This document shows, piece after piece, positions 24,745-54,925 of a DNA stretch of 64,000 nucleotides (position 1 is the first letter of the stretch; every line of letters starts with the position of its first letter). A program made the position numbers and the translations under genes. The DNA lies in the IMG/VR virus record IMGVR_UViG_3300033153_013547, positions 186,001-250,000 of that record; one strand, given 5' to 3'. The notes under the pieces were generated by a model that saw nothing but the letters and a program-made list of their open reading frames with translations, ran no database searches and was not told where the DNA came from.

Positions 24745-25332
24745 CTATTCAACTATAAATGATTCTCCATTGGTGTTGAGTATTTTATAAGGAGGCTTTA
24801 CATTAGAAGCTGTAGCTCCACCAGTTCTAAGAGTTAGAGCCAACCTATCTATTGAACTCATATTTAGATTCATAGTTGCATATAAAGCACCATAGGCTTG
24901 TGAAACAGCAATACCAATTGCAGCAAAGTCATAAGGATGTTCAATATGAGCAAATGATCCATCAATAATATACATATTCCCAGGCCAAGCTACAATGGTG
25001 TGACCAAGAATGTAGGCTCTGTTGTTGTCTTCAGAAATAAATAGGCCATCTCCCGTGGCCTCAATCAAGTTGTTGATGAATTCCCACATAATTTGGTCAG
25101 AAGATCGAAAGTTCCCTCTTTTGTCAGTAGTTTTAGGGAATTTCATGCTGTTCTGGAGTATTTTGATAAATCTCACACAACCAGCAGAGCCAACAATAAA
25201 TCCATCCTTGGCAAAAACTTTAAGCAAATTAGAATTAGATATACAATACTCATCACCATCCACACTGATACTACTATCAGCACCCATCCAAATTACGTCG
25301 TCTTTACCATGAATACCAACAACAAGTGTCAT
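24745..25332 (-). CDS. HslV/proteasome-beta-like Ntn-hydrolase protease
   Basis: (M)TLVVG...MGADS...KVF...GSAG...AAIG pattern with N-terminal Thr; ATGA overlap with the upstream stop. Confidence 0.75.
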   Translation of the reverse strand: MTLVVGIHGKDDVIWMGADSSISVDGDEYCISNSNLLKVFAKDGFIVGSAGCVRFIKILQNSMKFPKTTDKRGNFRSSDQIMWEFINNLIEATGDGLFISEDNNRAYILGHTIVAWPGNMYIIDGSFAHIEHPYDFAAIGIAVSQAYGALYATMNLNMSSIDRLALTLRTGGATASNVKPPYKILNTNGESFIVE

Positions 25333-25745
25333 ACACAACTCCTGACAAAAGCTTTCCTGTCTAATATATTAGTCTCAATACCAAATTTCTGTAGTATATT
25401 CTCAAATATTTCTGTGTGGCTCTGTGATGATCTTATTGTAAGTGTTTTCTGTGTAGCAACTTGTGAAATTCCTTCAATCAATATAACCATGTAGTCAGCA
25501 CTATGACCAAATCTAATAATAAACACTGGTATGCTATTATTAGCCATAGCTCGTCTAAAATGGACTACTAAACCTTCTCTGCTCAAAATATATTTATTAC
25601 TTGACGTATGTTTGGCTTCTACATAGTAGCCCTGCCCACGAACATCAGATTTGTCTATAGGTTTGGCGCCGGAGGCGACCGTGCGCCTCCCGGATAGGTC
25701 CTTGGCAATGTCTTCCTCCAAAATTATCCAGTTAGGCTTTCCCAT
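25329..25745 (-). CDS. PD-(D/E)XK nuclease, Holliday-junction-resolvase-like
   Basis: E...SGA..DKSDV.....VEAKHT motif. Confidence 0.7.
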   Translation of the reverse strand: MGKPNWIILEEDIAKDLSGRRTVASGAKPIDKSDVRGQGYYVEAKHTSSNKYILSREGLVVHFRRAMANNSIPVFIIRFGHSADYMVILIEGISQVATQKTLTIRSSQSHTEIFENILQKFGIETNILDRKAFVRSCV

Positions 25746-25996
25746 TATCCCCTGATATTTCTTGGATCCTTGCCATATGTTCTCTTGTCCTTGGATATTG
25801 TGCCATCTACATTGTGAATAGTTAGCTCTGCCTTACCACCTTCTTCCTTGATAGCACGACCAACTTCTACAGCCTTCCTGACTGTCTTTGACTTAGTGCT
25901 ATACACGTCTAATATCCTTCCGTTCTTCTTGACTTTCCACTCTTTGCTTTTTTTATTATACGTTACACTCAAATTTTGTCTTTTCTTACTCATCAT
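25745..25996 (-). CDS. DUF2188-family small protein
   Basis: WKVKKNG...TKSKTVRKAVEVGR...ELTIHNVDGTI...TYGKDPRNIRG. Confidence 0.8.
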   Translation of the reverse strand: MMSKKRQNLSVTYNKKSKEWKVKKNGRILDVYSTKSKTVRKAVEVGRAIKEEGGKAELTIHNVDGTISKDKRTYGKDPRNIRG

Positions 25997-26320
25997 TTAT
26001 TCCTTTGCAAAACCTTTTCCATTATCATACATATCTAAGGGATTACACACAATCTCTTCATCCATATCAATCTTTTGAGCAAGATATTGGGACACTATTC
26101 CTGCCTCAAAAATAGCTGAAGACCCAGACATCGCAAAACCCTTATGGTTTGTCACAACAACCTGATCATTATCTACAAGTATTTCCCAAAGAAAATAACA
26201 TTGCTTGTTTTCATCATGAGTCTTAGTAATTGTTACAACAAACAAGAAATTGAAATATTTGAACTTGGCTACTGACATGCCATCCATTCCTTCTACTTCT
26301 TCAAAATATAGATCCATCAT
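25997..26320 (-). CDS. hypothetical protein
   Basis: ORF with GAGGAG RBS in a tightly packed operon. Confidence 0.6.
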   Translation of the reverse strand: MMDLYFEEVEGMDGMSVAKFKYFNFLFVVTITKTHDENKQCYFLWEILVDNDQVVVTNHKGFAMSGSSAIFEAGIVSQYLAQKIDMDEEIVCNPLDMYDNGKGFAKE

Positions 26321-26647
26321 TTACTCCTCAATTCTTTTTACCTGATCAATTGAAATAGGCTCATAGCACCTTATTTGCCAATCATCACCTGCATACTTTC
26401 CTACAGGCAGCGTTACTTCCAACAATACTTCTGGAACAGCCCATTCTCCACTGCCATCGTTTTTGCCATATCGAGCATGTTCTTTCTTCAAAGCAAGCCA
26501 TGTTACACGACTCATCAAAGAGCCTTCCCAATATTGGTTCTTACGCCCCCATAAAACCCCTTCTTCCTGTATTTCCTTCCATGCTTTCTCTGTTGTGGCA
26601 TGATATGCCTTAAAGACTGGTTTATTCATCAACACTTCTTCCGTCAT
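26321..26647 (-). CDS. small ADP-ribosyltransferase-fold-like protein
   Basis: AYHATT...IQEEGV...VTWLA...VLLEV pattern typical of Tpt1/KptA-like ART folds. Confidence 0.45.
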   Translation of the reverse strand: MTEEVLMNKPVFKAYHATTEKAWKEIQEEGVLWGRKNQYWEGSLMSRVTWLALKKEHARYGKNDGSGEWAVPEVLLEVTLPVGKYAGDDWQIRCYEPISIDQVKRIEE

Positions 26648-26736
26648 TTATTTTGTCACCCCAATGACTATACATACTTCCTGCCATCAATAAATCTCTG
26701 TAAAACTTTCTCTTGAATGCTCTTGTTCAGTTCATT

Positions 26737-27024
26737 TTACTCATCATCCAAATACTCAGGCTCATATTCTTCCCCATCCATATATGCCTGTATTTTTTTA
26801 TATGCTTGTTTTCTATTGTTGTCAGCCTCAGCATTTTTCTCTGCATTCTCTGCTGCTTTTCTTAATATTGTGGTTGTTTTGTATTTCAACACTTCTTCTA
26901 CTCGTGAATCTGGCTGATCATCTCTCCATGCCTTACATTTAGGACAGCATTCCATAGACTTTGGATGAATATAATCATGCTCACATTCACAATCCCAATA
27001 CCTTGGATCAAGTTCAATAGTCAT
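26737..27024 (-). CDS. Cys/His-rich (zinc-binding) phage protein
   Basis: WDCECEHDYIH...CPKC. Confidence 0.6.
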   Translation of the reverse strand: MTIELDPRYWDCECEHDYIHPKSMECCPKCKAWRDDQPDSRVEEVLKYKTTTILRKAAENAEKNAEADNNRKQAYKKIQAYMDGEEYEPEYLDDE

Positions 27025-27030
27025 TTTGTC

Positions 27031-27381
27031 TCACCTCACATTCACTGGTTTGTCTGTTATATCTATCAGACAAAGATTTGGGGCATCTCCATAACCATCA
27101 GACCCATCTATCTCAAGATAGAAGATCTTCTTCTCTTGTAGAACATTGTATAAATAGTCAATGATACCATCTATATCATATTGATCTATCTTATTTACAA
27201 ATGCCTTTGTAAAATAACTATATTCATCCTCATCAAAAGATCCTGATGTAATAGAACTCTTGATGTTATCAAGATCTGGCTTGAACCGTTTAAACAGATT
27301 CTTTATGCCTTCTTTGCTATAATTCACTAGATAAATATATTCACCACCAAATGAAGTATAAACTATCATTGTTGTCGTCAT
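27031..27381 (-). CDS. hypothetical protein
   Basis: ORF with GGAGG RBS. Confidence 0.6.
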   Translation of the reverse strand: MTTTMIVYTSFGGEYIYLVNYSKEGIKNLFKRFKPDLDNIKSSITSGSFDEDEYSYFTKAFVNKIDQYDIDGIIDYLYNVLQEKKIFYLEIDGSDGYGDAPNLCLIDITDKPVNVR

Positions 27382-27595
27382 TGTGCTTCCTCCACTTTTT
27401 ATTATTGACTACCAGCAGAATTACCCAGTTAGGTTTTTTCATTCTGACCCCTGTTTATCAACCCATTATATGATTGTTGCTCTATACAAATGGACATTCC
27501 CGTCATCTGCTATAGCATAGAAATACCATGTAACCTGATCATTAGAATAGTACGCTACTCCATCTATTATAACTGTATAAGCAAAACCACTGTTA

Positions 27596-27934
27596 TCACT
27601 TACATCCCCAAATAAAGTAGATTATATGAATAATTATGGACGATACAGATAGCAAGATTGCCCAATTGGCTTTCCAGATAGCACTTCTACCAAGAAAAAT
27701 GTCTCTCGCATCCTTCAGATCATTTTTCCAGTGTTCCTCGCTTAAACATATTTCTCTACCATAATAAATTGCGCTCGGATCAGCGTAAATTTTAACCCTC
27801 CACCACTTATTTCGTATATCAATAATGGTTTTGTCTGGCAGCATTTTAGAATACAAACTTTCTAAACGCAATCTTTCTTTACTTTCACGGGTAGGCAGAT
27901 CTGACTTACTTTGTCCTATGATCTCATCATTCAT
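27596..27934 (-). CDS. C-terminally membrane-anchored protein (paralogue of 31997-32308)
   Basis: SKERLRLESLYSKMLP...WWRV...CL...WKNDLKDA plus TM tail. Confidence 0.7.
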   Translation of the reverse strand: MNDEIIGQSKSDLPTRESKERLRLESLYSKMLPDKTIIDIRNKWWRVKIYADPSAIYYGREICLSEEHWKNDLKDARDIFLGRSAIWKANWAILLSVSSIIIHIIYFIWGCK

Positions 27935-27991
27935 TTTTTCACCTCTTACCTCTTTATTATCCTTATCCCATCTCCTTCCATGATCACCCAG

Positions 27992-28345
27992 TTAGGTTTG
28001 GGGAACAATAGCAACACCTGCTACTCCTTCATCAGAATCATTTAGTAATTGATCTATAAGGTCTTGAACTTTTTTGTCATCTTGCTGGGCTTTTTTTATT
28101 GCAATTATCAGTTGAATAGCATCAACAATACTCATAACAGACATGATCAAGAGCAATGCAGCAGCAATTTGGGGATTGATGCCAAGGAACTTGACGAGAC
28201 GAAATGCCTGTGTTTTAGCGTTTCCTTTTAGAATATACCTGCCAACAAACACAGTCAGACCCCTAATACCATATATGCCTCCAATACCGATAGTCATCCC
28301 ATCACGAGTTTTTTGCCACCAAGATTTTGACTGTTCGTTCATCAC
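27992..28345 (-). CDS. 2-TM membrane protein
   Basis: Two hydrophobic segments; AGGAG RBS. Confidence 0.65.
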   Translation of the reverse strand: MMNEQSKSWWQKTRDGMTIGIGGIYGIRGLTVFVGRYILKGNAKTQAFRLVKFLGINPQIAAALLLIMSVMSIVDAIQLIIAIKKAQQDDKKVQDLIDQLLNDSDEGVAGVAIVPQT

Positions 28346-28360
28346 TTGTTCTCCTATCTC

Positions 28361-28882
28361 TTATTTCTTCAAGTTTCTATCCAAATCCAGCATACGAATT
28401 ATGATTTGCTGGGGATTGATATCAGATCCTTTGCTACGATTGAACGATTTATCAACCATCATCATATTTGACACGGTTGTTTGACCGCCTTTTGAATATG
28501 GTATCACATGATCTGCATCCATATTGCTCAATGCCTTATCAAGATTATAGTATGTTTTGTCTGTCATAGGACATTGCATGCCTTGTTTGGCAGCAACTTC
28601 TGCACGTATTTTATCACTAAAAATACGCTTACTTCCACCAGCAAATCGTCCATTATAAATGAATCCTGCTATATTGATCACATTTGCCACACAATATGTT
28701 GCAAGCAATAGACCAATAGTCATTCCCAAGATGTTTTTGTTAGCATTTTCTATAACTATGTAACCATCTTTGTAATAGTTTTGCACAAGAAACTTTGCAT
28801 TTTCGTATGATAATCTGCCATCACGAACTAATTGTCTGATGTCTTGATAGTCTATACGATAGCCCGTGTCCTTCTGTTTCAT
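28361..28882 (-). CDS. membrane-associated HNH endonuclease
   Basis: Hydrophobic ILGMTIGLLLATYCVANVINIAGFIY, then DADHVIPYSKGGQTTVSN...NRSKG (HNH). Confidence 0.75.
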   Translation of the reverse strand: MKQKDTGYRIDYQDIRQLVRDGRLSYENAKFLVQNYYKDGYIVIENANKNILGMTIGLLLATYCVANVINIAGFIYNGRFAGGSKRIFSDKIRAEVAAKQGMQCPMTDKTYYNLDKALSNMDADHVIPYSKGGQTTVSNMMMVDKSFNRSKGSDINPQQIIIRMLDLDRNLKK

Positions 28883-28898
28883 TTACTTTTACCTCAAG

Positions 28899-29342
28899 TT
28901 AATCAGATACAGAAACCGAATAATAATGTTCTCCAGTTTCTCTATTTATCCAGCTCCATGTACAGGTTATCAAATAACCTTCATCGTCCAATCGTCCTTC
29001 CCAAATCTCGTCAGCATGACCATATGGAGAAACTTTTTTGAAACCACAAACATGCATTCTATTCAAAAATGTTTGATAATCACCCTTCATGTGATTACCA
29101 AAACCTATTTTGATGACTTGTATATCTTGTGTGTGATCATCAGTTATATGATTGTCGATTGTCTCTTTAGCGGGTGCTATAATATCTGTTTTCCCCTTGT
29201 CAATGGTTTCTTCTGATATAAAGGACGACATTGATAAACTCTGTAAAATCATTCCAACAAACAATGAAATGATAATACATACGATAAGGGCTCCGGCAGG
29301 TACACCCTGCCCCTTTGGCTTGTTACTATATTTGTTGGTCAT
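28899..29342 (-). CDS. single-pass membrane protein
   Basis: N-terminal TM ALIVCIIISLFVGMIL; GGGAG RBS. Confidence 0.65.
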   Translation of the reverse strand: MTNKYSNKPKGQGVPAGALIVCIIISLFVGMILQSLSMSSFISEETIDKGKTDIIAPAKETIDNHITDDHTQDIQVIKIGFGNHMKGDYQTFLNRMHVCGFKKVSPYGHADEIWEGRLDDEGYLITCTWSWINRETGEHYYSVSVSD

Positions 29343-29357
29343 TAGCCACTCTCCCGA

Positions 29358-30440
29358 TTACTTCCCAGATTTAGCTCTATTACATGCCTTACATAACATT
29401 TGACAATTTTCAGGAATTGTCTTTCCACCCTTATGCCATGGGGTTATGTGATCTGCTTGCATTTCATCTATCTCAAAATGCTTTTCACATTTTACACAAA
29501 TGCCCTTCTGCCTTTCATATGCTTCCCTCTTCTGTCCTTCTGTAAATGCTCTAATATTTAGGTATTTTTCTTCTCTTGTCAAAACATATGAAAAAATACC
29601 AGACTTCTTGGTCACATCCTCATCTTGCATCAATTCAAATATTTCCTTATCCAACTTAACGGGGTCTATTTGTTTGTCTTTGAATTTATTGTATAAAAGT
29701 CCAAGTGGAACTTTCTTTATTTCCCTACGATAGGTAAGAAAAGTAGTTCTTGTCCAATTTATAACACGTTGGAAATATGTCCATAGATCAAGGGCGTCTG
29801 AATTATGCTGATTACGAGCCATATAATCTTCAATATTTTTATCACTGATCCACTCAATTGCAGTTTCTAAATAATCTTGACGAATTGGAGAACCAGGCAC
29901 ATAATCATGAGCCAAATCATAAGCAGGACAACCAGTCTTACTGAAATATCTTTTTGCATCAGTCAACCAAGGACCAGTGTAAATAGCATTACGAAGTTCT
30001 TGATCTGTCAACTTCTCACCAGCTATATTGATGGTTTTAAACCAGTCTAACTTTTCCTTGTCATTTCCTTCACAAAAATAAATCATCAACTTATAGTCAA
30101 GAATCTGCTCTTTCTCTGTGTCCTCAAGATTGTGAAAATACTGATAATCCAGTGAGAAATTGCCTGCTACATATTCACAAATGCTTATGGTTCTTTGCTG
30201 TCCATCCATAACTTCATAGGAACCATCTGTGTTCTTGACCCAATACATTACATTTAGGGGAAAATCCTTTCTTACTGTTTCAATTACAGCTGCCCTTTGC
30301 TTGTCTTTGTAAATAAATTCTCGTTGATATTTTGGACGAATGTTGAGCTTTCCACCATAACCAATAACACCTTCTTCGTTGTTATTGATGTATTCATTTA
30401 CTACTTCTCTGATAGTAATTTCTTTAAGTTCTATTTTCAT
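29358..30440 (-). CDS. DUF262 (ParB/GmrS-like) plus HNH endonuclease
   Basis: RPKYQREFIY, VMDGQQRT and FKTIN...ELRNA (DUF262); CVKC...ADHITPWHKGG...CKACN (HNH). Confidence 0.9.
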   Translation of the reverse strand: MKIELKEITIREVVNEYINNNEEGVIGYGGKLNIRPKYQREFIYKDKQRAAVIETVRKDFPLNVMYWVKNTDGSYEVMDGQQRTISICEYVAGNFSLDYQYFHNLEDTEKEQILDYKLMIYFCEGNDKEKLDWFKTINIAGEKLTDQELRNAIYTGPWLTDAKRYFSKTGCPAYDLAHDYVPGSPIRQDYLETAIEWISDKNIEDYMARNQHNSDALDLWTYFQRVINWTRTTFLTYRREIKKVPLGLLYNKFKDKQIDPVKLDKEIFELMQDEDVTKKSGIFSYVLTREEKYLNIRAFTEGQKREAYERQKGICVKCEKHFEIDEMQADHITPWHKGGKTIPENCQMLCKACNRAKSGK

Positions 30441-30456
30441 TTATTTATCCTGATAT

Positions 30457-30741
30457 TTATAAAATAACAACTGCATCAAGATGACCTGGTTCAAAATCTT
30501 CAAATGTAACAAAGAAATATTCGTCTTGACCATTATCAGGAGGAGATCTATTAATGATTAGGTAAGTTAGATATCCTGGTCTATATATTGCATACCATTC
30601 TTCGTTTTCGTTTCTATCTTTCTGTGATATTCTTTGTAATGATTTTTTAAACTCAGATTTTAATCTATGTTGTGCATCAATAAATGAATCAATCCCCTTC
30701 AGTAATTTTTCTAATTCACTTTTATGTTTGGCCTGTGTCAT
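30457..30741 (-). CDS. hypothetical protein inserted between MTase and DUF262-HNH
   Basis: ATGA-coupled ORF. Confidence 0.55.
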   Translation of the reverse strand: MTQAKHKSELEKLLKGIDSFIDAQHRLKSEFKKSLQRISQKDRNENEEWYAIYRPGYLTYLIINRSPPDNGQDEYFFVTFEDFEPGHLDAVVIL

Positions 30742-31682
30742 TTCATTCTCCTGTTTTTTATGAAAATTCTACTATACATTCTTTTGCCATTTATATACCC
30801 ACGCCCTTTGGAAATTTCTAAATCATACTCATTTCCCAATATTTCAAACTGCTCAGGATTGTATTTACTTAAAAATGTAATAGGCACACCCATAACACCA
30901 TCATAATCCATGGGTATATTTTTCACTTTATTAACCTCGATAGCATCGTAGTTATCATATTTTGGGTAGACCTCTTCATTTTTATAGTATTTCTTATACA
31001 AAATCAAATCTTCATGTCTTTTGGGATAGTCTAAATTGGTGAACCAACTTATAGCAGGAACCTTCCCATATTTCTTGCCAGTTTTTTCATCAATTCTATT
31101 CCATCTTTCATAATCATCAGATAGTCCAAATTCCATTACTATATTGGAGCTATTGCCCAACCAAATCTTATTTTCCTTGATCAACTTGAAAATTTCTTTG
31201 TAAGTAATAGCATTTTGATTACCAATTATTATAAATTTCTTGTCATATTCTATCAATTGATCAACATATTCCCTAAACAATGAAAAGGGTGGATTGGTGA
31301 CTACAACATCTGCTTCCTTCAATATCTCTATACATTCAGGACTTCTAAAATCACCATTTTGCTTCAAGGGGGTTTTTATGGTGTCCATCTTATTTATCTT
31401 GCCATCATCATTGATGTCAGCAATAAGTTCCAGTTTATATGACGGCTTATCTGTCTCAAAATGGGTGGCAATTAGTTTTTTTAGCCCCAGATGCTCAAAA
31501 TTCAAGGCAAAATAATTCCAGAAATTACTCTCTTCAGGATCATCACAATTGCAGAATATAATTTTACCTTTTAGGTGATCTTTATAGTGCTTCAATTCCC
31601 TTTCTATATCTGCTAATTGCGTATAAAATTCATCATTCTTTGCTTTCTTTGCTTGATGTAAATTTTTATTGGCTGCCATCAC
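30738..31682 (-). CDS. adenine-specific DNA methyltransferase, EcoRI-methylase family
   Basis: AKKAKNDEFYT, CNCDDP, GDFRSPEC, VVTNPPFSLFREY, GVMGVPITF. Confidence 0.9.
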   Translation of the reverse strand: MMAANKNLHQAKKAKNDEFYTQLADIERELKHYKDHLKGKIIFCNCDDPEESNFWNYFALNFEHLGLKKLIATHFETDKPSYKLELIADINDDGKINKMDTIKTPLKQNGDFRSPECIEILKEADVVVTNPPFSLFREYVDQLIEYDKKFIIIGNQNAITYKEIFKLIKENKIWLGNSSNIVMEFGLSDDYERWNRIDEKTGKKYGKVPAISWFTNLDYPKRHEDLILYKKYYKNEEVYPKYDNYDAIEVNKVKNIPMDYDGVMGVPITFLSKYNPEQFEILGNEYDLEISKGRGYINGKRMYSRIFIKNRRMK

Positions 31683-31948
31683 TCATCCCTCATCATACTA
31701 ATATCTTTCAATCTTTCTACTGCCTTCTCATAATATTCCATACTTTCGACAACATGTTTCCATTGAATATAAACAACATCAAGCTGTCCATGTTCATCAA
31801 CAAGTTTTTTGGCTGATTCCAGTACTGCTTGTTCTGTATTTTCTGCTGGAATATCAATAAATTTTAGAAATGTTGTGTCTAATTTCACAACATACCAGCC
31901 ATCCTCTTCTCCGTCCATTTCTGTTATACGATATTTATCTTCGCCCAT
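31679..31948 (-). CDS. chimeric small protein ending in a copy of an MTase C-terminus
   Basis: C-terminal YYEKAVERLKD matches 33605-34378 (YYDKAVERLKD). Confidence 0.6.
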   Translation of the reverse strand: MGEDKYRITEMDGEEDGWYVVKLDTTFLKFIDIPAENTEQAVLESAKKLVDEHGQLDVVYIQWKHVVESMEYYEKAVERLKDISMMRDE

Positions 31949-31996
31949 CTAATCACCTCGGTTATCATTCCACTTTGTCCAGGAATTGTCTTTCCA

Positions 31997-32308
31997 CTAA
32001 ATATAGTATAAGCCAACAATACTTACCACAACAGACGTGATAGACACAACGAGCGCCGTGATACTTATTGCACGATTCCTTTGTCCCTCCCAGTATACCA
32101 TAAAAACCTCTGCAGCGTCCTGAAGATCTTGCTTCCATTTGTCTATGCCCAGACATTTTTCTATGCCCATATTATCTATATATGGATCAATCCTCCACCA
32201 CATATCACCAATGGCTTTTATTTCTTTCAAGGGCATAATTTTGGCATATATTCGTTCGACCCTAGCTTTTTCCTTGCTTCGGTGTATTGACTTGTATTTT
32301 TTGCTCAT
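31997..32308 (-). CDS. C-terminally membrane-anchored protein (paralogue of 27596-27934)
   Basis: SKEKARVERIYAKIMP...WWRI...CL...WKQDLQDA plus TM tail. Confidence 0.7.
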   Translation of the reverse strand: MSKKYKSIHRSKEKARVERIYAKIMPLKEIKAIGDMWWRIDPYIDNMGIEKCLGIDKWKQDLQDAAEVFMVYWEGQRNRAISITALVVSITSVVVSIVGLYYI

Positions 32309-32309
32309 T

Positions 32310-32924
32310 TTACTTTCTTAGTACGAATTTGTCGATACTTCGCTGATACACTTTCCATCGATCAAATATTTTATCTTGATCTGATATCTCGAAGCGAATT
32401 GCGTATTCGTTGTTGGTATTGTTCTTGCCTGATTCCCTTGTGCCATGAGCATAACCAGCCTTAGTTAGATCAAGCTCTTTATGCATTTCATTATTGGTTA
32501 ATAGGAAAGTATAACGAACGAACTCCTCACTTCTTATGTCAAATGCTTCAACAATATAGTCTACTTCCTGCCAAGGTCTGATCTGCACTATGTTTACATT
32601 GGAACCATCGTGCATCAGCAGCGAGCACTTATATTCGAAATGGATACCATTAGCATTTCTACAATCTCCCCTACCATCAGATGCCTTGACTTTCACCAGC
32701 CCGTTTTCTCTTATGAATCTATTTTCTATTCTAGGAGCAAATGCCTGACTACTTAAGAACGACATACCATATATAAAATATTCCCAACTTTCATTGTTTC
32801 CCCAGCTCCTATCTTTGCCAATAGTTGTCTTGATATAGTTCGGTATTTTACTAGCCTCTTTTAATTGTTGCAAAGTTAGCTTGATTTTCTGCAATTCTTT
32901 TGACCGCCTTGTCGTAAAACTCAT
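32310..32924 (-). CDS. putative type II restriction endonuclease
   Basis: PD-(D/E)XK-like GDC...FEYKCS and VQIRPW; overlaps the adjacent MTase gene. Confidence 0.6.
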   Translation of the reverse strand: MSFTTRRSKELQKIKLTLQQLKEASKIPNYIKTTIGKDRSWGNNESWEYFIYGMSFLSSQAFAPRIENRFIRENGLVKVKASDGRGDCRNANGIHFEYKCSLLMHDGSNVNIVQIRPWQEVDYIVEAFDIRSEEFVRYTFLLTNNEMHKELDLTKAGYAHGTRESGKNNTNNEYAIRFEISDQDKIFDRWKVYQRSIDKFVLRK

Positions 32925-33603
32925 TATTAGATTCTATACCAACGAATTGCCTATTCAAATTAGTAGCGGCTACAGCCGTAGTCCCACTACCAATACAATT
33001 ATCTAAAACTAAATCATTTTCATTGGTATATACTTTGATTAAATACTCAAATAACTCAAGTGGTTTTTGGGTAGGATGCCCTCCCTTGATCCTCGGATTA
33101 CTTATTTTGATCACGGACCTGGCATGTCTGAAGCCTTCGTTATTTTTATAGCTTGATTTTTGCTGATTATACATATCACTTTTGTAACCAGCCTTTCGGC
33201 TTATGGAATATGGTGTTCCAATCGTTTTCTGCTCATTATATACTGGTATTTTCGTGTAAAATACCAGTATATTCTCATGCACTCTTAGGGGCTGGTGTTT
33301 TATGTTGAGCTGTCCTGATCCTATAGTCTTTTCCCATATCAACTCATATTTAAATAACTCAATATTACTTGCTATCAATAATGAAGTAAATGGTTGTGAA
33401 GCCGTCAAGACGATGGCCCCGTTGTTCTTGATAATCCTTTTATATTCTTTCCACAATGGCTCAAAAGGTATGATCACATCCCATTTACAGTTGGTCGTTC
33501 CATATGGCAAATCACACAGGATCATATCAATAGATCCGTCTTCAATATGTGGCATTATATCCAAACAATCTCCAAGGTAGATATTATTAGGCTCTATTTT
33601 CAT
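32851..33603 (-). CDS. N4/N6 DNA methyltransferase (beta class)
   Basis: GDCL...DLPYG...HPTQKP...VLDNCIGSGTT. Confidence 0.92.
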   Translation of the reverse strand: MKIEPNNIYLGDCLDIMPHIEDGSIDMILCDLPYGTTNCKWDVIIPFEPLWKEYKRIIKNNGAIVLTASQPFTSLLIASNIELFKYELIWEKTIGSGQLNIKHQPLRVHENILVFYTKIPVYNEQKTIGTPYSISRKAGYKSDMYNQQKSSYKNNEGFRHARSVIKISNPRIKGGHPTQKPLELFEYLIKVYTNENDLVLDNCIGSGTTAVAATNLNRQFVGIESNNEFYDKAVKRIAENQANFATIKRG

Positions 33604-33604
33604 T

Positions 33605-34378
33605 TTACATCAACCCTTCTTCCTTCTCCTTCACATCATCCATTTCTGCATGCCTTCTTACATCTTTCAATCTTTCTACTGCCTTATCATAATATTGTTT
33701 GTCTAATTCACAACCCATAGCATTTCTACCTTGCTGTATTGCAGCTACAAGCATAGTGGCAGATCCACAAAAAGGATCCAAAACAACATCTCCAGCATTA
33801 GAATGTATATCTATAAGCTCATGCATCAATTTCAATGGTTTTTGGGTAGGATGTAATCTCTTGCCCCCATCTCTATGTATTGGCTGACTAAAAACACCAT
33901 TATGATATTTTGCATGAAATGTAGGTTTTGATCCCTTTGTGGCTACAATAGCAACTTCACGAGCATTTGTCAAATAAGATACCTTAGAATTTATAGGCAC
34001 AGGAATTGTCTTGATCCATTCAATGAAACGAAGCATTTTGAACTTTTTGCTCTTCAGCAGACAAGCCAGGGATTCTAATTTCCATAGATCATAGAACACA
34101 ATGATAGTGCCCCCTTTTCTTAGCACACGATAACATTCTCCAAAAACATTGTCAAATAAACTAGCATGATCTTCTGCAGCAATCTTGTCCCACTTACCAA
34201 AATCCATAGATATTCTTAGACGCTCAACTCCCTTGTCACCCATAGCCTGAAACCCTGTTTTCTTTGATATTTGATAAGGTGGATCAGTAAGCACAAGATC
34301 AATAGAATTATCATCTATTTCCTTGAGAAAGTCCTGGGCATCTCTATTTTCAAAAACAAGATTAGGCTTTATCTCCAT
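33605..34378 (-). CDS. N4/N6 DNA methyltransferase (beta class)
   Basis: DPPY, HPTQKP, VLDPFCGSAT. Confidence 0.92.
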   Translation of the reverse strand: MEIKPNLVFENRDAQDFLKEIDDNSIDLVLTDPPYQISKKTGFQAMGDKGVERLRISMDFGKWDKIAAEDHASLFDNVFGECYRVLRKGGTIIVFYDLWKLESLACLLKSKKFKMLRFIEWIKTIPVPINSKVSYLTNAREVAIVATKGSKPTFHAKYHNGVFSQPIHRDGGKRLHPTQKPLKLMHELIDIHSNAGDVVLDPFCGSATMLVAAIQQGRNAMGCELDKQYYDKAVERLKDVRRHAEMDDVKEKEEGLM

Positions 34379-35026
34379 CTACACCAGTTCCTCTTTCACA
34401 ACATCTAAAAGATTGTTGTATATTATGCCCAATCCATTATGGAATTCTTTATCTAATTTGTTGCCTATATCCAGATAGTTTTTATTACTAACAGAATGTA
34501 ATCCACTGAAATAATTATAGCCATCATTGGGTATTGATGTGGTTATTTGATCGCCACTACTACGAAGGTTGGGTATATCCTCCCTCGATATCACGGCAAA
34601 CCCTATATCCATTGTTCCCTTGCGATTGTTGCCTCTTTGTATAGTCATTAGATAGTCAAACTCTAAATCATGTACATCTGGATCTTGACTATTATTACCC
34701 AATTTATTCTTGATCACTATTGACTTTGCAGTTGTGAGTCGATTGGGAGATTTTTTGAGCGGTTGTTGAAACATATATGTCTGGATTTTGACAGAGATTC
34801 TATCTTTATTATTGTACATTAAATCATATCCAACATTGTACGATGATTCCAAAACATTCTTACCAACATAAGGCTTAACAATAGTATAACACAACAAATG
34901 ACTAATATGAAATCTATAATCGGGCTTATTCATTTCTGGCGGTATTCCTCTAGACGCCATCTCAATAGATTTTAATATATTGTTATGTTCCAATCGACAA
35001 AATCGTATAAAACTGCATCCAAACAC
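34379..35026 (-). CDS. putative restriction endonuclease (divergent PD-(D/E)XK)
   Basis: GYDLMY...ISVK motif; lies between two MTase genes. Confidence 0.45.
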   Translation of the reverse strand: MFGCSFIRFCRLEHNNILKSIEMASRGIPPEMNKPDYRFHISHLLCYTIVKPYVGKNVLESSYNVGYDLMYNNKDRISVKIQTYMFQQPLKKSPNRLTTAKSIVIKNKLGNNSQDPDVHDLEFDYLMTIQRGNNRKGTMDIGFAVISREDIPNLRSSGDQITTSIPNDGYNYFSGLHSVSNKNYLDIGNKLDKEFHNGLGIIYNNLLDVVKEELV

Positions 35027-36009
35027 TACTTACTTCCTTTACAATACTTGTCTATAATATTTTTGATTGAGAATTTTCCTCTTCCGTATTTCTGTTGCAA
35101 GAATAAATTCACTTCGCCCTGTCCTAAACCTTTGTCTAACAACGATTTATAATCATTACGGATCGAGGCAATTTCTCCTTCTTCTATCTTTTTGCCCTGA
35201 TTTTTGGGCACAACATTTACCACTTTTTTCATGTTATCAAGATCACAACCAAATTTTATCTCTCCCAATTTACTAATATGATGATCAAAAATACTCTTAT
35301 TAATCTCATATCCCACTATCTTTCTGCCCAATTTGATAGCATTATATGCTGTAGTAAAATTACCCATAAAAAAATCACACACCATATCCCCAGCATTGGA
35401 TGAATATAAAATCATTTTTCTAACCAATTCATTTGGTAGTTTGTTTTGGTTTTTTGGTATTTTGGGATCATATTCTTTATTAATAATAAAGACATCTTCT
35501 AGATCCTGATATAACAATGACTTACCTGTGGAGGTCTTTTCTTGTGATCCAAATCTACAATAGGTATTGAAAATATTTTTGCTTTTTATGCTTTTGCTAT
35601 AATATAAAATATGATAATGTGAAGTTACATATTTCTTTTTTGTATACACACCAAAATTATATTTCCAGATAATATGATTAATCTCATGTAACTTTAGGGC
35701 ATAAGCTGCATTTAACACATGCCTCAAATTACTATGTCCCATGATAATATACATTGACCCATTTGGTTTCAATATTCTGGATGCTTCTGTCATCCACTCA
35801 TGCGTCCATTTCCCGTAATCTGCAGGGGCTTCGACATAACCATCTATGATATTAGACGAATCTCTTTTATAGTGTTTATCAAATGATATCTCATCAATGC
35901 CAAATGGTGGATCATATATCCCTAAATCAACATGATTATCTGGGATATCTGCTCTGCTGCTCATACAATCAGCATTAAATATCTGAATTTTGGGTTTTCT
36001 TTCTCTCAT
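35026..36009 (-). CDS. N4/N6 DNA methyltransferase (beta class) with C-terminal extension
   Basis: DPPF, NQNKLP, VCDFFMGNFTT. Confidence 0.88.
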   Translation of the reverse strand: MRERKPKIQIFNADCMSSRADIPDNHVDLGIYDPPFGIDEISFDKHYKRDSSNIIDGYVEAPADYGKWTHEWMTEASRILKPNGSMYIIMGHSNLRHVLNAAYALKLHEINHIIWKYNFGVYTKKKYVTSHYHILYYSKSIKSKNIFNTYCRFGSQEKTSTGKSLLYQDLEDVFIINKEYDPKIPKNQNKLPNELVRKMILYSSNAGDMVCDFFMGNFTTAYNAIKLGRKIVGYEINKSIFDHHISKLGEIKFGCDLDNMKKVVNVVPKNQGKKIEEGEIASIRNDYKSLLDKGLGQGEVNLFLQQKYGRGKFSIKNIIDKYCKGSK

Positions 36010-36043: not shown

Positions 36044-36367
36044 CTACTCTTCCTCATAATACTCAAGAAGTTCTTGAATAAGATTAGCTTTCTCTATGCT
36101 TTTTGTATAACCTGCTCGTATTCTAGCATGGTGTTGCCTTTTCACAGAATCCTTCGTTTCTTCTGGTTCCTGACATTCCTTGGTCTCTTCACCATAAATC
36201 TTGATAGACTGTGGCTGATATTGTGGATCACTATGTTGCGCACAATAAACCAAACAAGCCAAATCAGACAAGTCTTCTAATTTCTGAAGAGCTTCTCTCT
36301 TTGTCTGTGCCTCAACCATTACTTCTGCATCAATAATCCATTCAACAGGAATGATAAATTGTTTCAT
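36044..36367 (-). CDS. DpnD/PcfM-like small protein
   Basis: F.IPVEW...VMVEAQTKREALQKL. Confidence 0.6.
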   Translation of the reverse strand: MKQFIIPVEWIIDAEVMVEAQTKREALQKLEDLSDLACLVYCAQHSDPQYQPQSIKIYGEETKECQEPEETKDSVKRQHHARIRAGYTKSIEKANLIQELLEYYEEE

Positions 36368-36576
36368 TATAACTCCTCCACAAAATCTTCCATTTCCTCT
36401 ATAGAATCTTCATCAACATGAAACGAGTCATCTACATACCAAGCATCTCCTCCACTTTCAACACATTCTCTAGTAGACATTTTCCATGCTAATTCTAGTG
36501 CCTCTTTCTCTGTTTCAGCTTTAACATATACATCAACACCTACTCTCCATGTAACGAAGATGGCAAACTCTTTCAT
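36367..36576 (-). CDS. DpnD/PcfM-like small protein
   Basis: FAIFVTW...VYVKAETEKEALELA. Confidence 0.6.
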   Translation of the reverse strand: MKEFAIFVTWRVGVDVYVKAETEKEALELAWKMSTRECVESGGDAWYVDDSFHVDEDSIEEMEDFVEEL

Positions 36577-37148
36577 TATAACTCCTCCATAACTTTTTCC
36601 AAAATCTCATCAAGGTCAAGTGGTTTTCCTAATAATTCAGCCCATTCTGTCAACTTGATTGTTTGATGATAATCACCATCAGGATAGTAATTGGAAAGAT
36701 AGGGCCAATCAAACTCAGTAAGCACTTGTTTAGCATATTCTTTTGCTATGCCATAGGCTGTTTCATGATCATCTGCTATGATCTCAAAATAAAATTTGAA
36801 GTCGTGGCCTTTTGGTTTATAAAATCGTTTTATAATATCATGTTCACCATAAACCGTATAACAAGGACGATGCTCCCACAATTTGAGATTCTCATCAGCA
36901 CCTTCGTCTTCAATAATAATATAACCCTTACGATCAGTATAAAAGTCCCAATTAGCTTCAGTTATACTGAAACTATATTTCATTTGGTAATCCACAATAG
37001 TCTCTATTGGATAACCAAGGATTTCACAATACTGTTGCTGATCACTATCTAATTTAGCAACAGATTTCTCAGCCAGTTCTTCTGTAGCAAACACTCCATG
37101 AATAGATGCCTTGCAATCCCTGTTGATAACTACCCATACTTCTACCAT
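36576..37148 (-). CDS. hypothetical phage protein
   Basis: VWVV...IHGVFATEELAEK N-terminal motif; GGAG RBS. Confidence 0.65.
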   Translation of the reverse strand: MVEVWVVINRDCKASIHGVFATEELAEKSVAKLDSDQQQYCEILGYPIETIVDYQMKYSFSITEANWDFYTDRKGYIIIEDEGADENLKLWEHRPCYTVYGEHDIIKRFYKPKGHDFKFYFEIIADDHETAYGIAKEYAKQVLTEFDWPYLSNYYPDGDYHQTIKLTEWAELLGKPLDLDEILEKVMEEL

Positions 37149-51048: not shown

Positions 51049-51300
51049 TTAATGTTGCAATGTAGCAATAACACTCACTATATGATCGAATTTTACATAA
51101 TAATATCGATCAATAACCGTAGGTTTGGTGACATCAAACATCGATCCACAGATATCTCTTCTGTCTTTCATTTGATGAACCAATTCTTCTACTTCATGAG
51201 AAGATATGTTCTCTAAATCTATTACATGTAACTCCCCATGAATTTCCACTTTTATTTCAACATCATAGAAATCATCATCTCTAAAATTCAGTTCTTTCAT
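51049..51300 (-). CDS. hypothetical protein
   Basis: ATGA coupling to the DnaE-C stop. Confidence 0.6.
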   Translation of the reverse strand: MKELNFRDDDFYDVEIKVEIHGELHVIDLENISSHEVEELVHQMKDRRDICGSMFDVTKPTVIDRYYYVKFDHIVSVIATLQH

Positions 51301-52391
51301 GATGGTTCTTTTACCTCCAACTGTTCCAACTCAAACACTTTCTTAATTACTATTGTGCCTCTATTACTTACCTTTCCCTCAATACACACAGGATTATTAT
51401 TAACCAGTAATCCCAGTGAGGCAATATCTTTCTCATCATCTTCATCATAAAAATATATGCATGGTAGATGAGTTATCCCGTCAGAAATTTCAAACACAAG
51501 GTAAGGGGTTCCTTTTCTGCTAATAAATGATCTTCTTGAAGAAACAAGACCAACATACTGCCCCTGAACCTTGCCTATTTGTCTTGATTCCGTAGGATTA
51601 TGAGCTCCTGCAGGTATATTATAAGCATCTAAAATGCCACCAGAAATATACACTCCCAAGATCTCAAACTCCATGGAACTTAATTCAGCCTTACTAAACT
51701 CCCCTATGATTACAAGTTCATCTATATCTAGATCAAGAGGTAATGGCTCACGTGATTCTGCCTTTTTATTCTTTAGCCTTGCTTTATTCTTAGCATTCCA
51801 TTCATGTATTTTTCTATAAGCATATAAGAGAGCTTTACGTGTCAGCACAACATCACTATTATCTAACAGAGGTATACCATCAAACGCACCTATTTTGATT
51901 AGATTAATCATTCCATCTTTACGTGCTGTGCCCCTAACTACAATATCCTGCACAGATTTATATGGTCCATTGTCTTCTCTGTTTTTTACAATGACACTGG
52001 CTGAATTTAGCCCCACCTTCCTTACAGAAGTCAGCCCAAACATAATATGTCTAACTTTGTCATCGTCTTCATATGGTGTAAACATAGTACCAGAAATGTT
52101 GATCCTTGGTGGTGAGAGCTTTATTTTCAATTGTTTACACTCCTTCATGAAATCCCTAAGAGTATTCTCAAGATCATCTCCACTTTTAGACTCAATAGCA
52201 TCAATCATAGATGCAGCAATAAAAATATGTGGCCAGTATGTTTTTACATAGGCAGTATGATAGGTCAAGATAGCATAAGATACTGAATGACTGTTCTGAC
52301 TAACCAAAAATTGTTTAGCCCTTTCATCTGTTACTAGATAATTGTGAGGAGGACCATCAAGTGAAAGACTTATAAAGGCTTTTTTATTCAT
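51297..52391 (-). CDS. dnaE: DNA polymerase III alpha, C-terminal piece with N-terminal split intein half (IntC)
   Basis: IntC ...PHNYLV...FLVSQN followed by extein SHSVSYAILTYHTAYVKTYWP; PPRINIS; HhH FGLTSVRKVG; LIKIGAFD; EFEILGVYISG; OB fold. Alternative TTG start at 52418. Confidence 0.92.
   Translation of the reverse strand: MNKKAFISLSLDGPPHNYLVTDERAKQFLVSQNSHSVSYAILTYHTAYVKTYWPHIFIAASMIDAIESKSGDDLENTLRDFMKECKQLKIKLSPPRINISGTMFTPYEDDDKVRHIMFGLTSVRKVGLNSASVIVKNREDNGPYKSVQDIVVRGTARKDGMINLIKIGAFDGIPLLDNSDVVLTRKALLYAYRKIHEWNAKNKARLKNKKAESREPLPLDLDIDELVIIGEFSKAELSSMEFEILGVYISGGILDAYNIPAGAHNPTESRQIGKVQGQYVGLVSSRRSFISRKGTPYLVFEISDGITHLPCIYFYDEDDEKDIASLGLLVNNNPVCIEGKVSNRGTIVIKKVFELEQLEVKEPS
52293..52391 (-). 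mobile_element. split intein C-half (IntC, ~33 aa)
   Basis: Block F-like FISLSLDGPPHNYLV and block G LVSQN/S. Confidence 0.85.
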
Positions 52392-52875
52392 ACCTTGTTC
52401 CCATCCATCTACAGACAATTAATCCAGAATTGATCTTTTCATAATTCACACAAATATCCAAAAACTGATCAACAGTAGCAATAGCACTATCAGTTCCTGC
52501 TGTTTTTAGTGCTCTTGCAAATATTTGCCTATTTTTATCCTGATCTATTACACCACGAATATTCTCCATTACATTCCACTTTTGAGCCATTTGTCTAATA
52601 CAAGTCCAGTGAGTCATCAATATAGGATCCTTGTTGATATTACGTCCATATCCACGAATTGTGGGTAGTTCAGAGGCACCAGCCTGCTTAAATACTTTTG
52701 ACATACTACGTATTATGCTTGATCCCTTACAATAAAAATAATCAGTTCCTGGTAACTCATCACGTTTAACTACAATAGCTGTTGTTGATCTCATCCTTGT
52801 ATCTTTAGGTAATTTGATCAAATAGTAATTATTACCACATATACTAACTTTGCCAATTATATTGTTATCCATCAA
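52384..52875 (-). CDS. hypothetical protein between the two split-intein halves
   Basis: AAAGGA RBS; overlaps the IntN stop and the IntC start; no recognisable endonuclease motif. Confidence 0.7.
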   Translation of the reverse strand: MMDNNIIGKVSICGNNYYLIKLPKDTRMRSTTAIVVKRDELPGTDYFYCKGSSIIRSMSKVFKQAGASELPTIRGYGRNINKDPILMTHWTCIRQMAQKWNVMENIRGVIDQDKNRQIFARALKTAGTDSAIATVDQFLDICVNYEKINSGLIVCRWMGTRYE

Positions 52876-54541: not shown

Positions 54542-54599
54542 ATCCTCTCCACTATATTTCTTTTGTCTCAGTAGCTTCTTTGTCTAATGGTTCTCTCAT

Positions 54600-54917
54600 T
54601 CAGTCTGCTTCTTTGTCAAACAACTGGGGCATCATGGATTCTAACATATCTGTTACATCATCTAACCTTTCCTTTAGTATATCAATCTTTTCTTCCAGTG
54701 CTTCAAGCTTCTGACTCATGTCTTCTGTATAGATCACATGGGTTGGAGCAGGAGGATAACCACCATCAGGATAAGGTAAGGGAGTACCAATAAATGAGTC
54801 AGGAATTAGTGGATCCTGCTTCCATGTATAATCAGTTGTTCCACTATCTGTGATTTCTATCCAATTGTGATCATTGGTGCGGTAAATTCCATGCATACTA
54901 TTATCATCACTAAACAT
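54600..54917 (-). CDS. hypothetical protein with coiled-coil C-terminus (paralogue of 55539-55910)
   Basis: KLEALEEKIDILKERLDDVTDMLESMMPQLFDKEAD. Confidence 0.65.
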   Translation of the reverse strand: MFSDDNSMHGIYRTNDHNWIEITDSGTTDYTWKQDPLIPDSFIGTPLPYPDGGYPPAPTHVIYTEDMSQKLEALEEKIDILKERLDDVTDMLESMMPQLFDKEAD

Positions 54918-54925
54918 TTACACTC

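What the first reader, a model, noticed from the sequence alone, without database searches (positions are those of the whole stretch)
25712..28000. Three copies of the 5' end of the resolvase gene mark repeated insertion at one site
Seen: the nuclease gene starts MGKPNWIILEED (core ccagttagg at 25728). Orphan copies lie in upstream gaps: MKKPNWVIL at 27425 (with the same CAGGGG leader) and KPNWVIMEGD at 27988. The two orphan copies share 14 identical nt (acccagttaggttt). Start-less C-terminal gene remnants lie at ~27465-27605 and ~26668-26735. Inference: gene cassettes have been added repeatedly in front of this gene, each time regenerating its start, which makes an accretion hotspot. The core matches GTTRRRY on the + strand, but no attC hairpin or integrase is visible.
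Basis: partly seen in the sequence, partly recalled or inferred. Interest (0 to 1): 0.6.

Follow-up and report, generated by a model that had tools for sequence, protein, structure and literature searches.

The report
Orphan resolvase gene starts mark insertions
In a 261-kb jumbo phage, two orphan copies of the first ten or so codons of a Holliday-junction resolvase gene lie upstream of it and bracket small gene sets, most likely as scars of past recombination that added genes in front of the resolvase rather than as an active cassette system.

Summary
The window is part of a complete 261,124-bp phage genome. The gene at 25329-25745 (-) is an Hjc-fold Holliday-junction resolvase. A 30-nt probe from its codons 3-12 has its two best non-self matches in the whole genome (23/30 and 22/30; next best 19/30) at 27436 and 27999. 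Both lie on the same strand within 2.3 kb upstream. Copy 2 keeps an SD-like leader and an ATG, and a start-less 51-codon frame with gene-like codon usage precedes it. Copy 3 lacks a start and contains the stop codon of the upstream gene.

Copy 3 differs from the live gene mostly by synonymous or conservative changes (P 0.0004 against eight random substitutions). That fits a diverged resolvase allele, though in-place duplication is not excluded.

The integron-like reading fails. The genome has no tyrosine or serine recombinase, the copies have no hairpins, and GTTRRRY occurs at or below chance. Of about 320 gene starts screened, only this one has upstream orphan copies.

No close relative and no sequencing run could be found, so gene-content variation was not tested.

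Best reading: scars of at least two recombination events in a plastic accessory region. Interest is modest.

The parts
25329..25745 (-). Intact Holliday-junction resolvase gene (138 aa, Hjc-type PD-(D/E)XK nuclease)
   Evidence: phrog_2002 E 4.6e-14. AF2 model pLDDT 88.6. The top 25 Foldseek PDB hits are almost all archaeal Hjc/Hje. E10, D34 and K45 are invariant and E43 nearly so in 58 distant homologues.
25710..25754 (-). Copy 1, the live gene start: CAGGGG leader (25749-25754), ATG (25743-25745), codons 3-12 KPNWIILEED
27407..27453 (-). Copy 2, orphan: CAGGGG leader (27448-27453), ATG (27440-27442), MKKPNWVIL. It opens a 33-codon ORF that runs into gene C.
   Evidence: 23/30 and 29/40 to copy 1, the best non-self match in the genome; ORF 27341-27442
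27970..27999 (-). Copy 3, orphan: codons 3-12 only (KPNWVIMEGD), no leader or ATG. The stop codon of gene A (27992-27994) lies inside it in another frame.
   Evidence: 22/30 to copy 1; frames; coding-type divergence P 0.0002-0.0004
27466..27621 (-). Start-less 51-codon frame (X) ending 23 nt before the ATG of copy 2. Probably the 3' end of the gene that once preceded that resolvase allele.
   Evidence: no paralogue and no homologue
27596..27934 (-). Gene B (112 aa, C-terminal membrane helix), the only intact gene between copies 3 and 2
   Evidence: Paralogue at 31997-32308, 40% identity, E 5e-16; no Pfam or PHROG family
25745..27381 (-). Genes C (27031-27381), D (26737-27024), E (26321-26647), F (25997-26320) and G (25745-25996, DUF2188), the set between copies 2 and 1. 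The stop of G overlaps the resolvase ATG.
   Evidence: codon-usage log-odds favour the annotated frames
27992..28345 (-). Gene A (117 aa, hydrophobic), whose last codons and stop run into copy 3
28361..28882 (-). HNH endonuclease gene next to the array. It lies outside both gene sets; any role is unproven.
   Evidence: Pfam HNH_4, HNH_5 and HNH; only distant HNH-domain matches in phages

Best explanation
The two orphan copies are scars of at least two past recombination events that placed new genes directly upstream of the resolvase gene, inside a plastic accessory region of a jumbo phage.

In each event, one junction fell about 10 codons into the resolvase gene that was then resident. The incoming DNA, probably from a related phage with a different resolvase allele, supplied the new genes and an intact resolvase start. 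Homology further inside the gene probably resolved the other side.

The displaced first codons stayed behind as non-functional fragments:
- Copy 2 still carries its leader, its ATG and the 3' end of its former upstream gene X.
- Copy 3 later lost its leader, so the stop codon of gene A now lies inside it.

Only short remnants survive, because long direct repeats would be removed in a phage that encodes its own UvsX-like recombinase.

Shown: the copies, their uniqueness, their layout, the coding-type divergence of copy 3, and the absence of recombinases and att or attC features. Inferred: the order of events, the donors and the survivorship argument.
For: 1. The copies are the two best non-self matches to the gene start in 522 kb of sequence. 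They lie on the same strand within 2.3 kb upstream.
2. A screen of about 320 gene starts found upstream orphan copies only here. The other hits were tandem paralogues or a repeat family outside the window.
3. Copy 3 differs from copy 1 at 8 of 30 nt, 5 of them at third codon positions. It keeps 7 of 10 residues, including the catalytic Glu10; P(BLOSUM at least as high) is 0.0002-0.0004 for 8 random changes.
4. MKKxNW...E is a family-typical N-terminus. A distant homologue starts with 13 nt identical to copy 2. Protein constraint plus codon bias therefore explains the shared 14-mer.
5. A start-less frame with gene-like codon usage ends just before the leader of copy 2.
6. Other partial gene copies flank inserted genes nearby. 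A methylase C-terminal motif is copied at about 31700 and 33660. A 39-aa C-terminal segment is shared by ORFs 54600-54917 and 55539-55910 around ORF 54926-55564.
7. The neighbourhood is an accessory region with four DNA methylases, a GmrSD-like HNH nuclease and an HNH gene.
8. A UvsX-like recombinase is encoded at 59993-61177.
Against: - No relative is available, so neither gene-content polymorphism nor donor arrangements were seen.
- Copy 2 shows no coding-type signature beyond codon 9 (P 0.19).
- If half of the copy 1 to copy 3 differences arose in the live gene after a duplication in place, the coding-type signal weakens to P about 0.08.
- Both remnants stop at about the same codon (9-12). 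Uniform random breakpoints in a 417-nt gene would do this with probability of about 0.01 (my arithmetic), so the account needs the survivorship argument or a site preference.
- It also needs about four junctions within 600 nt.
- GC content shows no foreign patches.
Confidence: 0.58

Rival explanations
1. Targeted insertion hotspot. A site-specific enzyme recognises the conserved 5' end of the resolvase gene, so cassettes enter repeatedly at that site and bring a replacement gene start. The enzyme could be a homing-type endonuclease such as the nearby HNH, or a host or helper recombinase.
For: - Both remnants end at about the same codon, and copies 2 and 3 share an exact 14-mer that differs at 2 positions from the live gene.
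- An HNH gene lies 16 nt upstream of gene A.
- The DNA polymerase is split into three ORFs, which hints at mobile insertions in this genome.
- Partial duplication of neighbouring gene ends beside free-standing homing endonuclease genes is described in fungal mitochondria (PMC7487136).
Against: - The complete genome has no tyrosine or serine recombinase.
- No hairpins at the copies, and GTTRRRY is at or below chance.
- Similarity to the resolvase extends 3' of the core in both orphans. Copy 3 lacks the 5' arm, the opposite of an attL-type site.
- Neither gene set contains a recognisable nuclease.
- The HNH protein has a hydrophobic segment and only distant HNH-domain relatives.
- No orphan copy was found beside the nearest available homologue.
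Confidence: 0.13
2. Duplication in place. Short pieces of the gene start were duplicated within this lineage by slippage, template switching or unequal exchange between sister genomes when DNA was inserted. The orphans then drifted while the live gene evolved under constraint.
For: - The geometry fits equally well.
- GC content is uniform across the region.
- With half of the differences unconstrained, the copy 1 to copy 3 similarity is not excluded (P about 0.08).
- Copy 2 shows no coding-type signature.
Against: - Eight unconstrained changes are excluded for copy 3 (P 0.0002-0.0004).
- Copies 2 and 3 also differ from each other by synonymous or conservative changes at codons 7-9.
- The gene sets between the copies are unrelated to one another, so this is not a tandem duplication of content.
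- Copy 2 comes with the 3' end of a gene that has no counterpart elsewhere in the genome.
Confidence: 0.17
3. Selected function. The repeated block is a regulatory or translational element, for example a protein-binding site or a leader mini-ORF that couples translation into genes B and C, and it is kept for that reason.
For: - The exact 14-mer lies in two intergenic spacers, 36-50 nt upstream of the starts of B and C.
- Copy 2 has an SD-like leader and an ATG, and its 33-codon ORF overlaps the start of gene C.
Against: - The motif occurs nowhere else in the 261-kb genome at 20/30 or better.
- No promoter-like or terminator-like site coincides with the copies, and no structure does either.
- Copy 3 has no start codon.
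- The similarity follows codon structure, not a fixed DNA site.
Confidence: 0.08
4. Chance resemblance of short AT-rich sequences.
For: Unrestricted local self-comparison gives about 340 pairs at 22/30 or better within 6 kb across the genome, so a single pair at that level is common.
Against: With the probe fixed to this gene start, the only matches at 20/30 or better in the genome are these two. They lie in register, on one strand, next to the gene, with family-typical peptide content. The shuffled expectation for the 9-mer is 0.27 against 4 found.
Confidence: 0.01

Closest known systems
Mosaic junctions from illegitimate or homeologous recombination between phages (PMC2327257; the general phage-mosaicism literature, from my own knowledge)
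   Same: Gene fragments without starts or ends sit at boundaries between gene blocks. Exchange occurs between diverged relatives, and a phage-encoded recombinase is present.
   Different: Here two successive scars come from the same end of the same gene, both truncated at about codon 10. No relatives are available to show the parental arrangements.
PeSL-mediated modular shuffling in hyperplastic regions of T4-type phages (PMC2839356, PMC4122927)
   Same: Short direct repeats flank small ORFan genes in a variable region of a large lytic phage. Such repeats can support deletion, insertion and mini-circle formation.
   Different: PeSLs are dispersed promoter plus stem-loop cassettes. The repeats here are fragments of one coding sequence, with no promoter or stem-loop and only three copies at one locus.
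Tandem accretion of integrative elements at a gene end, such as genomic islands at tRNA genes (my own knowledge)
   Same: One intact gene sits at the end of the array, and partial copies of that gene end act as direct repeats between successive inserts.
   Different: No integrase is present. The inserts are 0.56 and 1.7 kb and carry no mobility genes. The repeats are only 73-77% alike, and copy 3 has the wrong arm for an attL-type site.
Partial duplication of neighbouring gene ends beside free-standing homing endonuclease genes in fungal mitochondria (PMC7487136)
   Same: An inserted ORF is accompanied by a duplicated end of the adjacent gene, which leaves a pseudogene fragment.
   Different: Neither insert here contains an endonuclease gene. 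The nearby HNH gene lies outside both inserts and its activity is unknown.
Integron gene-cassette arrays, including those reported in phages (PMC9892861)
   Same: Small genes in one orientation are separated by a recurring short motif that happens to fit GTTRRRY.
   Different: There is no IntI and no attC hairpin, and GTTRRRY is not enriched.

Membership tests
Hjc-type Holliday-junction resolvase (the gene itself) | PD-(D/E)XK catalytic residues E ... D ... E-x-K | tested here: met
   E10, D34 and K45 are invariant and E43 nearly so in 58 homologues
Hjc-type Holliday-junction resolvase (the gene itself) | Hjc fold | tested here: met
   AF2 pLDDT 88.6. The top 25 Foldseek PDB hits are almost all Hjc/Hje, probability 1.00 for the best ranks, TM 0.5-0.6.
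Hjc-type Holliday-junction resolvase (the gene itself) | Match to a curated family model | tested here: inconclusive
   phrog_2002 E 4.6e-14, but no Pfam hit for the query. 7 of 58 homologues hit Pfam Hjc weakly.
Hjc-type Holliday-junction resolvase (the gene itself) | Cleavage of four-way junctions | not testable with these tools
   Needs a biochemical assay
Integron cassette array | Integron integrase (tyrosine recombinase) in the genome | tested here: not met
   PF00589 gave no match in the complete genome, and the controls were positive
Integron cassette array | attC imperfect inverted repeat at cassette ends | tested here: not met
   Single-strand DNA folds of 131 nt around each copy gave z -1.7 to +0.9
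Integron cassette array | GTTRRRY core specific to cassette boundaries | tested here: not met
   107 matches in the window against 124 expected
Site-specific (att-type) tandem accretion at a gene end | Tyrosine or serine recombinase | tested here: not met
   PF00589 and PF00239 absent. Host enzymes were not testable.
Site-specific (att-type) tandem accretion at a gene end | Orphan repeats keep the original outer arm and lose gene similarity right after a common core | tested here: not met
   Copy 3 lacks the leader and ATG, yet matches the gene for 18 nt past the 9-nt core
Site-specific (att-type) tandem accretion at a gene end | Intact gene at one end with partial copies as direct repeats between inserts | tested here: met
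Free-standing homing endonuclease cassette | Endonuclease gene within or directly beside the inserted segment | tested here: inconclusive
   No nuclease in genes B to G. The HNH gene at 28361-28882 is upstream of gene A, outside both inserts.
Free-standing homing endonuclease cassette | Presence or absence polymorphism among relatives, and cleavage of the empty site | not testable with these tools
   No relatives and no runs listed
PeSL-type shuffling cassettes | Repeated early promoter plus stem-loop terminator | tested here: not met
   No promoter-like or terminator-like site at the copies and no stem-loops
Recombination scars at phage mosaic junctions | Gene fragments lacking a start or an end at block boundaries | tested here: met
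   Copy 2, copy 3 and frame X; a methylase C-terminal fragment at about 31700
Recombination scars at phage mosaic junctions | Fragments diverged as coding sequence, so they come from another functional allele | tested here: inconclusive
   Copy 3 P 0.0002-0.0004 under all-random change, but about 0.08 if only half of the changes were unconstrained. Copy 2 P 0.19.
Recombination scars at phage mosaic junctions | Different gene content at the locus in related genomes | not testable with these tools
   No relative closer than 35% identity for the resolvase among 1.84 billion representatives

The most novel reading that the evidence does not exclude
The conserved 5' end of the resolvase gene is a true targeted insertion site in a jumbo phage. 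A nuclease, such as the adjacent membrane-type HNH protein or the resolvase itself acting at the GC-rich inverted repeat at codons 19-25, breaks resident alleles there. Repair from a co-infecting relative then brings in cargo genes plus a resistant gene start. This would be a recombinase-free cassette-accretion system.
Probability: 0.08. Interest if true: 0.7.

Novelty: new member of a known kind. Interest (0 to 1): 0.3.

Why it matters
The locus gives a legible, dated-by-layers record of how a large lytic phage gains small accessory genes: each gain left a fragment of the gene it landed next to. Such scars are rarely this clear, because most junctions in phage genomes leave no trace. If relatives are found, the locus would let one read the order and the sources of the gains. 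It would also test whether a conserved gene start can act as a preferred landing site. As it stands, it does not reveal a new mechanism.

Tried and rejected
- Searches for relatives gave nothing close:
  - blastn of 4.7 kb and of genes C to F against GenBank phages.
  - Peptide-pattern scans of IMG/VR with the resolvase and with a polymerase piece.
  - Word search with the resolvase, which returned only itself.
  - Full HMMER scan of 1.84 billion representatives, best non-self 35% identity.
  - tblastn against phages, with 33% Streptomyces phage resolvases as the best hits.
  - tblastn of gene B, no match.
- Sequencing runs: none was listed, so read laying was not used and deletion or circle reads could not be sought.
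- A possible fourth copy (KANWAILLSV at 27644-27673, 19/30 to copy 2) was dropped. It lies in the C-terminal membrane helix of gene B, and the paralogue of B ends in a similar helix.
- Frame X has no paralogue and no homologue.
- The gene upstream of the nearest resolvase homologue is unrelated to gene G, and that locus has no orphan copies.
- GC profile shows no foreign patch.
- The GC-rich inverted repeat at 25671-25690 is the only such perfect hairpin in the window. It folds no better than shuffles of the same GC-rich stretch (z -1.2 to -1.4), so it is only a lead.
- PDB sequence search gave nothing.
Full report
**Context.** The window is bases 186001-250000 of a complete virus record of 261,124 bp with direct terminal repeats and 38% G+C. 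All genes from about 20 to 36 kb of the window lie on the minus strand. On that strand, in the direction of transcription, the order is:
- an HNH endonuclease gene (28361-28882);
- gene A (27992-28345);
- copy 3;
- gene B (27596-27934);
- a start-less frame X (27469-27621);
- copy 2;
- genes C, D, E, F and G (27381 down to 25745);
- the resolvase gene (25329-25745);
- an HslV-like peptidase gene and a 1564-aa tail-fibre-like gene.

Further upstream lie a GmrSD-like HNH nuclease and four DNA methylases. The finding therefore sits at the edge of an accessory, defence-related region.

**The gene.** The 138-aa product matches phrog_2002, Holliday junction resolvase, at E 4.6e-14, but no Pfam model.
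- A scan of 1.84 billion representative proteins found 59 distant homologues, the best at 35% identity.
- In an alignment of 58 of them, E10, D34 and K45 are invariant and E43 is nearly so, which is the PD-(D/E)XK pattern.
- An AlphaFold2 model built on that alignment has pLDDT 88.6. Its top 25 Foldseek matches in the PDB are almost all archaeal Hjc or Hje resolvases.

**The observation.** The 9-mer core occurs four times in the window against 0.27 expected, three of them on one strand at 25728, 27425 and 27988. The three copies align in register over 29-38 nt at 76% identity.

The sharper test fixes the probe to the gene start and scans the whole genome on both strands.
- For the 30 nt of codons 3-12, the only matches at 20/30 or better are copy 2 (23/30) and copy 3 (22/30). 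The next best is 19/30.
- For 40 nt from the ATG, copy 2 scores 29 against a next best of 24.
- Extrapolating the score distribution gives well under 0.1 expected match at 22/30 in the whole genome. Two matches within 2.3 kb upstream on the same strand are therefore not chance.

An unrestricted self-comparison does give hundreds of 22/30 pairs, so the fixed-probe test is the one that counts. A screen of about 320 predicted gene starts by the same method found upstream orphan copies only for this gene. The other hits were tandem paralogues or a repeat family at 74-84 kb of the genome, outside the window.

**Anatomy of the copies.**
- *Copy 2* has the same CAGGGG leader as the live gene, with a spacer 2 nt longer. 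It has an ATG and reads MKKPNWVIL. It then runs on as a 33-codon ORF that overlaps the start of gene C.
- *Frame X* ends 23 nt upstream of the copy 2 ATG. It is a 51-codon open frame with no start codon. Its codon usage scores 0.31 bits per codon, like the real genes nearby (0.14-0.38), while its other two frames score -0.04 and -0.23. I read it as the 3' end of the gene that once preceded that resolvase allele. No homologue or paralogue confirms this.
- *Copy 3* starts at codon 3 and has no leader or ATG. In another frame it supplies the last codons and the stop of gene A.
- *The second claimed remnant* (26668-26736) is 22 codons in frame after the stop of gene D. It is not significant.

**Are the orphans decayed duplicates or pieces of other alleles?** Copy 3 differs from the live start at 8 of 30 nt. 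Five differences are at third codon positions and the peptide keeps 7 of 10 residues, including Glu10. Random placement of 8 substitutions gives so similar a peptide in 0.02-0.04% of trials. Copies 2 and 3 also differ from each other at codons 7-9 only by synonymous or conservative changes. This fits fragments of resolvase alleles that diverged while functional.

There is a caveat. If half of the differences arose in the live gene under constraint after a duplication in place, the probability rises to about 0.08. Copy 2 has no such signature beyond codon 9 (P 0.19).

The exact 14-mer shared by copies 2 and 3 needs no special explanation. Family members often begin MKKxNW...E, and a distant homologue from another sample begins with 13 nt identical to copy 2.

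**Tests of the integron or att idea.**
- GTTRRRY occurs 107 times in the window against 124 expected.
- Single-strand folds of 131 nt around each copy are unremarkable, with z from -1.7 to +0.9.
- The complete genome has no match to the tyrosine recombinase or the serine recombinase families, while the control genomes do.
- An attL-type orphan should keep the outer arm and lose similarity to the gene right after the core. Copy 3 does the opposite.
- No promoter-like or terminator-like site coincides with the copies.

**Wider pattern.** The same window holds other partial gene copies next to inserted genes.
- A 35-nt, nearly identical piece encoding the C-terminal motif of an N6/N4 methylase occurs both at the end of the methylase 33605-34378 and at the end of a small ORF near 31700.
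- Two small ORFs in the polymerase region share a 39-aa C-terminal segment at 59% identity around ORF 54926-55564.
- The DNA polymerase itself is encoded in three ORFs.
- Gene B has a paralogue at 31997-32308.

The genome has therefore been reshaped often by insertions that leave fragments, and it encodes a UvsX-like recombinase.

**Interpretation.** The most economical account is serial recombination scars. At least twice, DNA carrying other small genes and a resolvase start was joined to this genome, with one junction about 10 codons into the resident resolvase gene. The displaced start stayed behind.

Uniform random breakpoints would rarely give two remnants that both stop near codon 10. 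I attribute this to survivorship: longer direct repeats would be lost by homologous recombination. This step is inferred, and a site preference cannot be excluded.

A GC-rich inverted repeat at 25671-25690, 20 nt beyond the repeated block, is the only perfect GC-rich hairpin in the window. It folds no better than composition predicts, so it is only a lead.

Three rivals remain: a targeted, nuclease-driven hotspot; duplication in place; and a selected regulatory role. Each is weighed in the Rival explanations section.

**Limits.** No relative close enough to compare gene content exists in any collection searched. No sequencing run was listed. Neither polymorphism nor deletion and circle junctions could therefore be examined, and read laying was not used.

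**Comparison with known systems.** The layout resembles tandem accretion at a gene end, and also PeSL-flanked ORFans in T4-type hyperplastic regions (PMC2839356, PMC4122927). It lacks the defining parts of both. It fits best among mosaic-junction scars from recombination between diverged phages (PMC2327257). There is a formal parallel in the partial duplications of gene ends beside free-standing homing endonuclease genes in fungal mitochondria (PMC7487136).

**Verdict.** The mechanism is most likely ordinary, and interest is modest unless relatives reveal targeting.

Noticed in passing
window 51297-57142 (-): The DNA polymerase (phrog_405) is encoded in three separate ORFs: 55910-57142, 52865-54541 and 51297-52418, which cover profile positions 42-440, 433-793 and 794-1042. 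Small ORFs with no known family lie between the pieces.
   Followed up: partly
window 54600-54917 and 55539-55910 (-): Two small ORFs share a 39-aa C-terminal segment (59% identity, E 1e-13). They flank ORF 54926-55564 between polymerase pieces 1 and 2, another insertion bracketed by partial gene copies.
   Followed up: partly
window about 31690-31760 and 33650-33720 (-): A nearly identical stretch of about 35 nt encodes YY(E/D)KAVERLKD. It forms the C-terminal motif of the N6/N4 methylase 33605-34378 and also the end of a small ORF just upstream of the EcoRI-type methylase 30738-31682, a likely methylase 3' fragment.
   Followed up: partly
window 28361-36009 (-): A dense accessory cluster: an HNH gene with a hydrophobic segment, a GmrSD_N plus HNH nuclease (29358-30440), an EcoRI-type adenine methylase, three N6_N4 methylases and several small membrane proteins.
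   Followed up: partly
window 31997-32308 (-): A paralogue of gene B (40% identity over 73 aa). Both proteins end in a hydrophobic helix.
   Followed up: yes
window 25671-25690: A perfect 7-bp GC-rich inverted repeat with a 6-nt loop lies inside resolvase codons 19-25, 20 nt past the repeated block. It is the only such hairpin in genome 127-261 kb, but it is no more stable than shuffles of this GC-rich patch.
   Followed up: partly
window 27386-27394 and 25712-25720 (-): The 9-mer TGGAGGAAG, which forms codons 9-12 of the resolvase, recurs as the SD region of gene C, 21 nt further from the core than in the gene. Copy 2 may therefore extend to about codon 13 with an insertion, or this may be an SD coincidence (read).
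   Followed up: no
window 26668-26736 (-): A 22-codon open stretch lies in frame directly after the TAA stop of gene D. It could be a former C-terminal extension or chance.
   Followed up: partly
G000:C1:74000-84500 (outside the window): A dense family of near-identical repeats (up to 100 nt, about a dozen copies 0.3-5 kb apart), together with most of the genome's GC-rich perfect hairpins. Possibly a regulatory cassette family of the PeSL kind.
   Followed up: no
window 36351-36590 (-): Two adjacent small genes share the SD region and first codons (26/30 over 56 nt, 209 nt apart). They are probably tandem paralogues.
   Followed up: no
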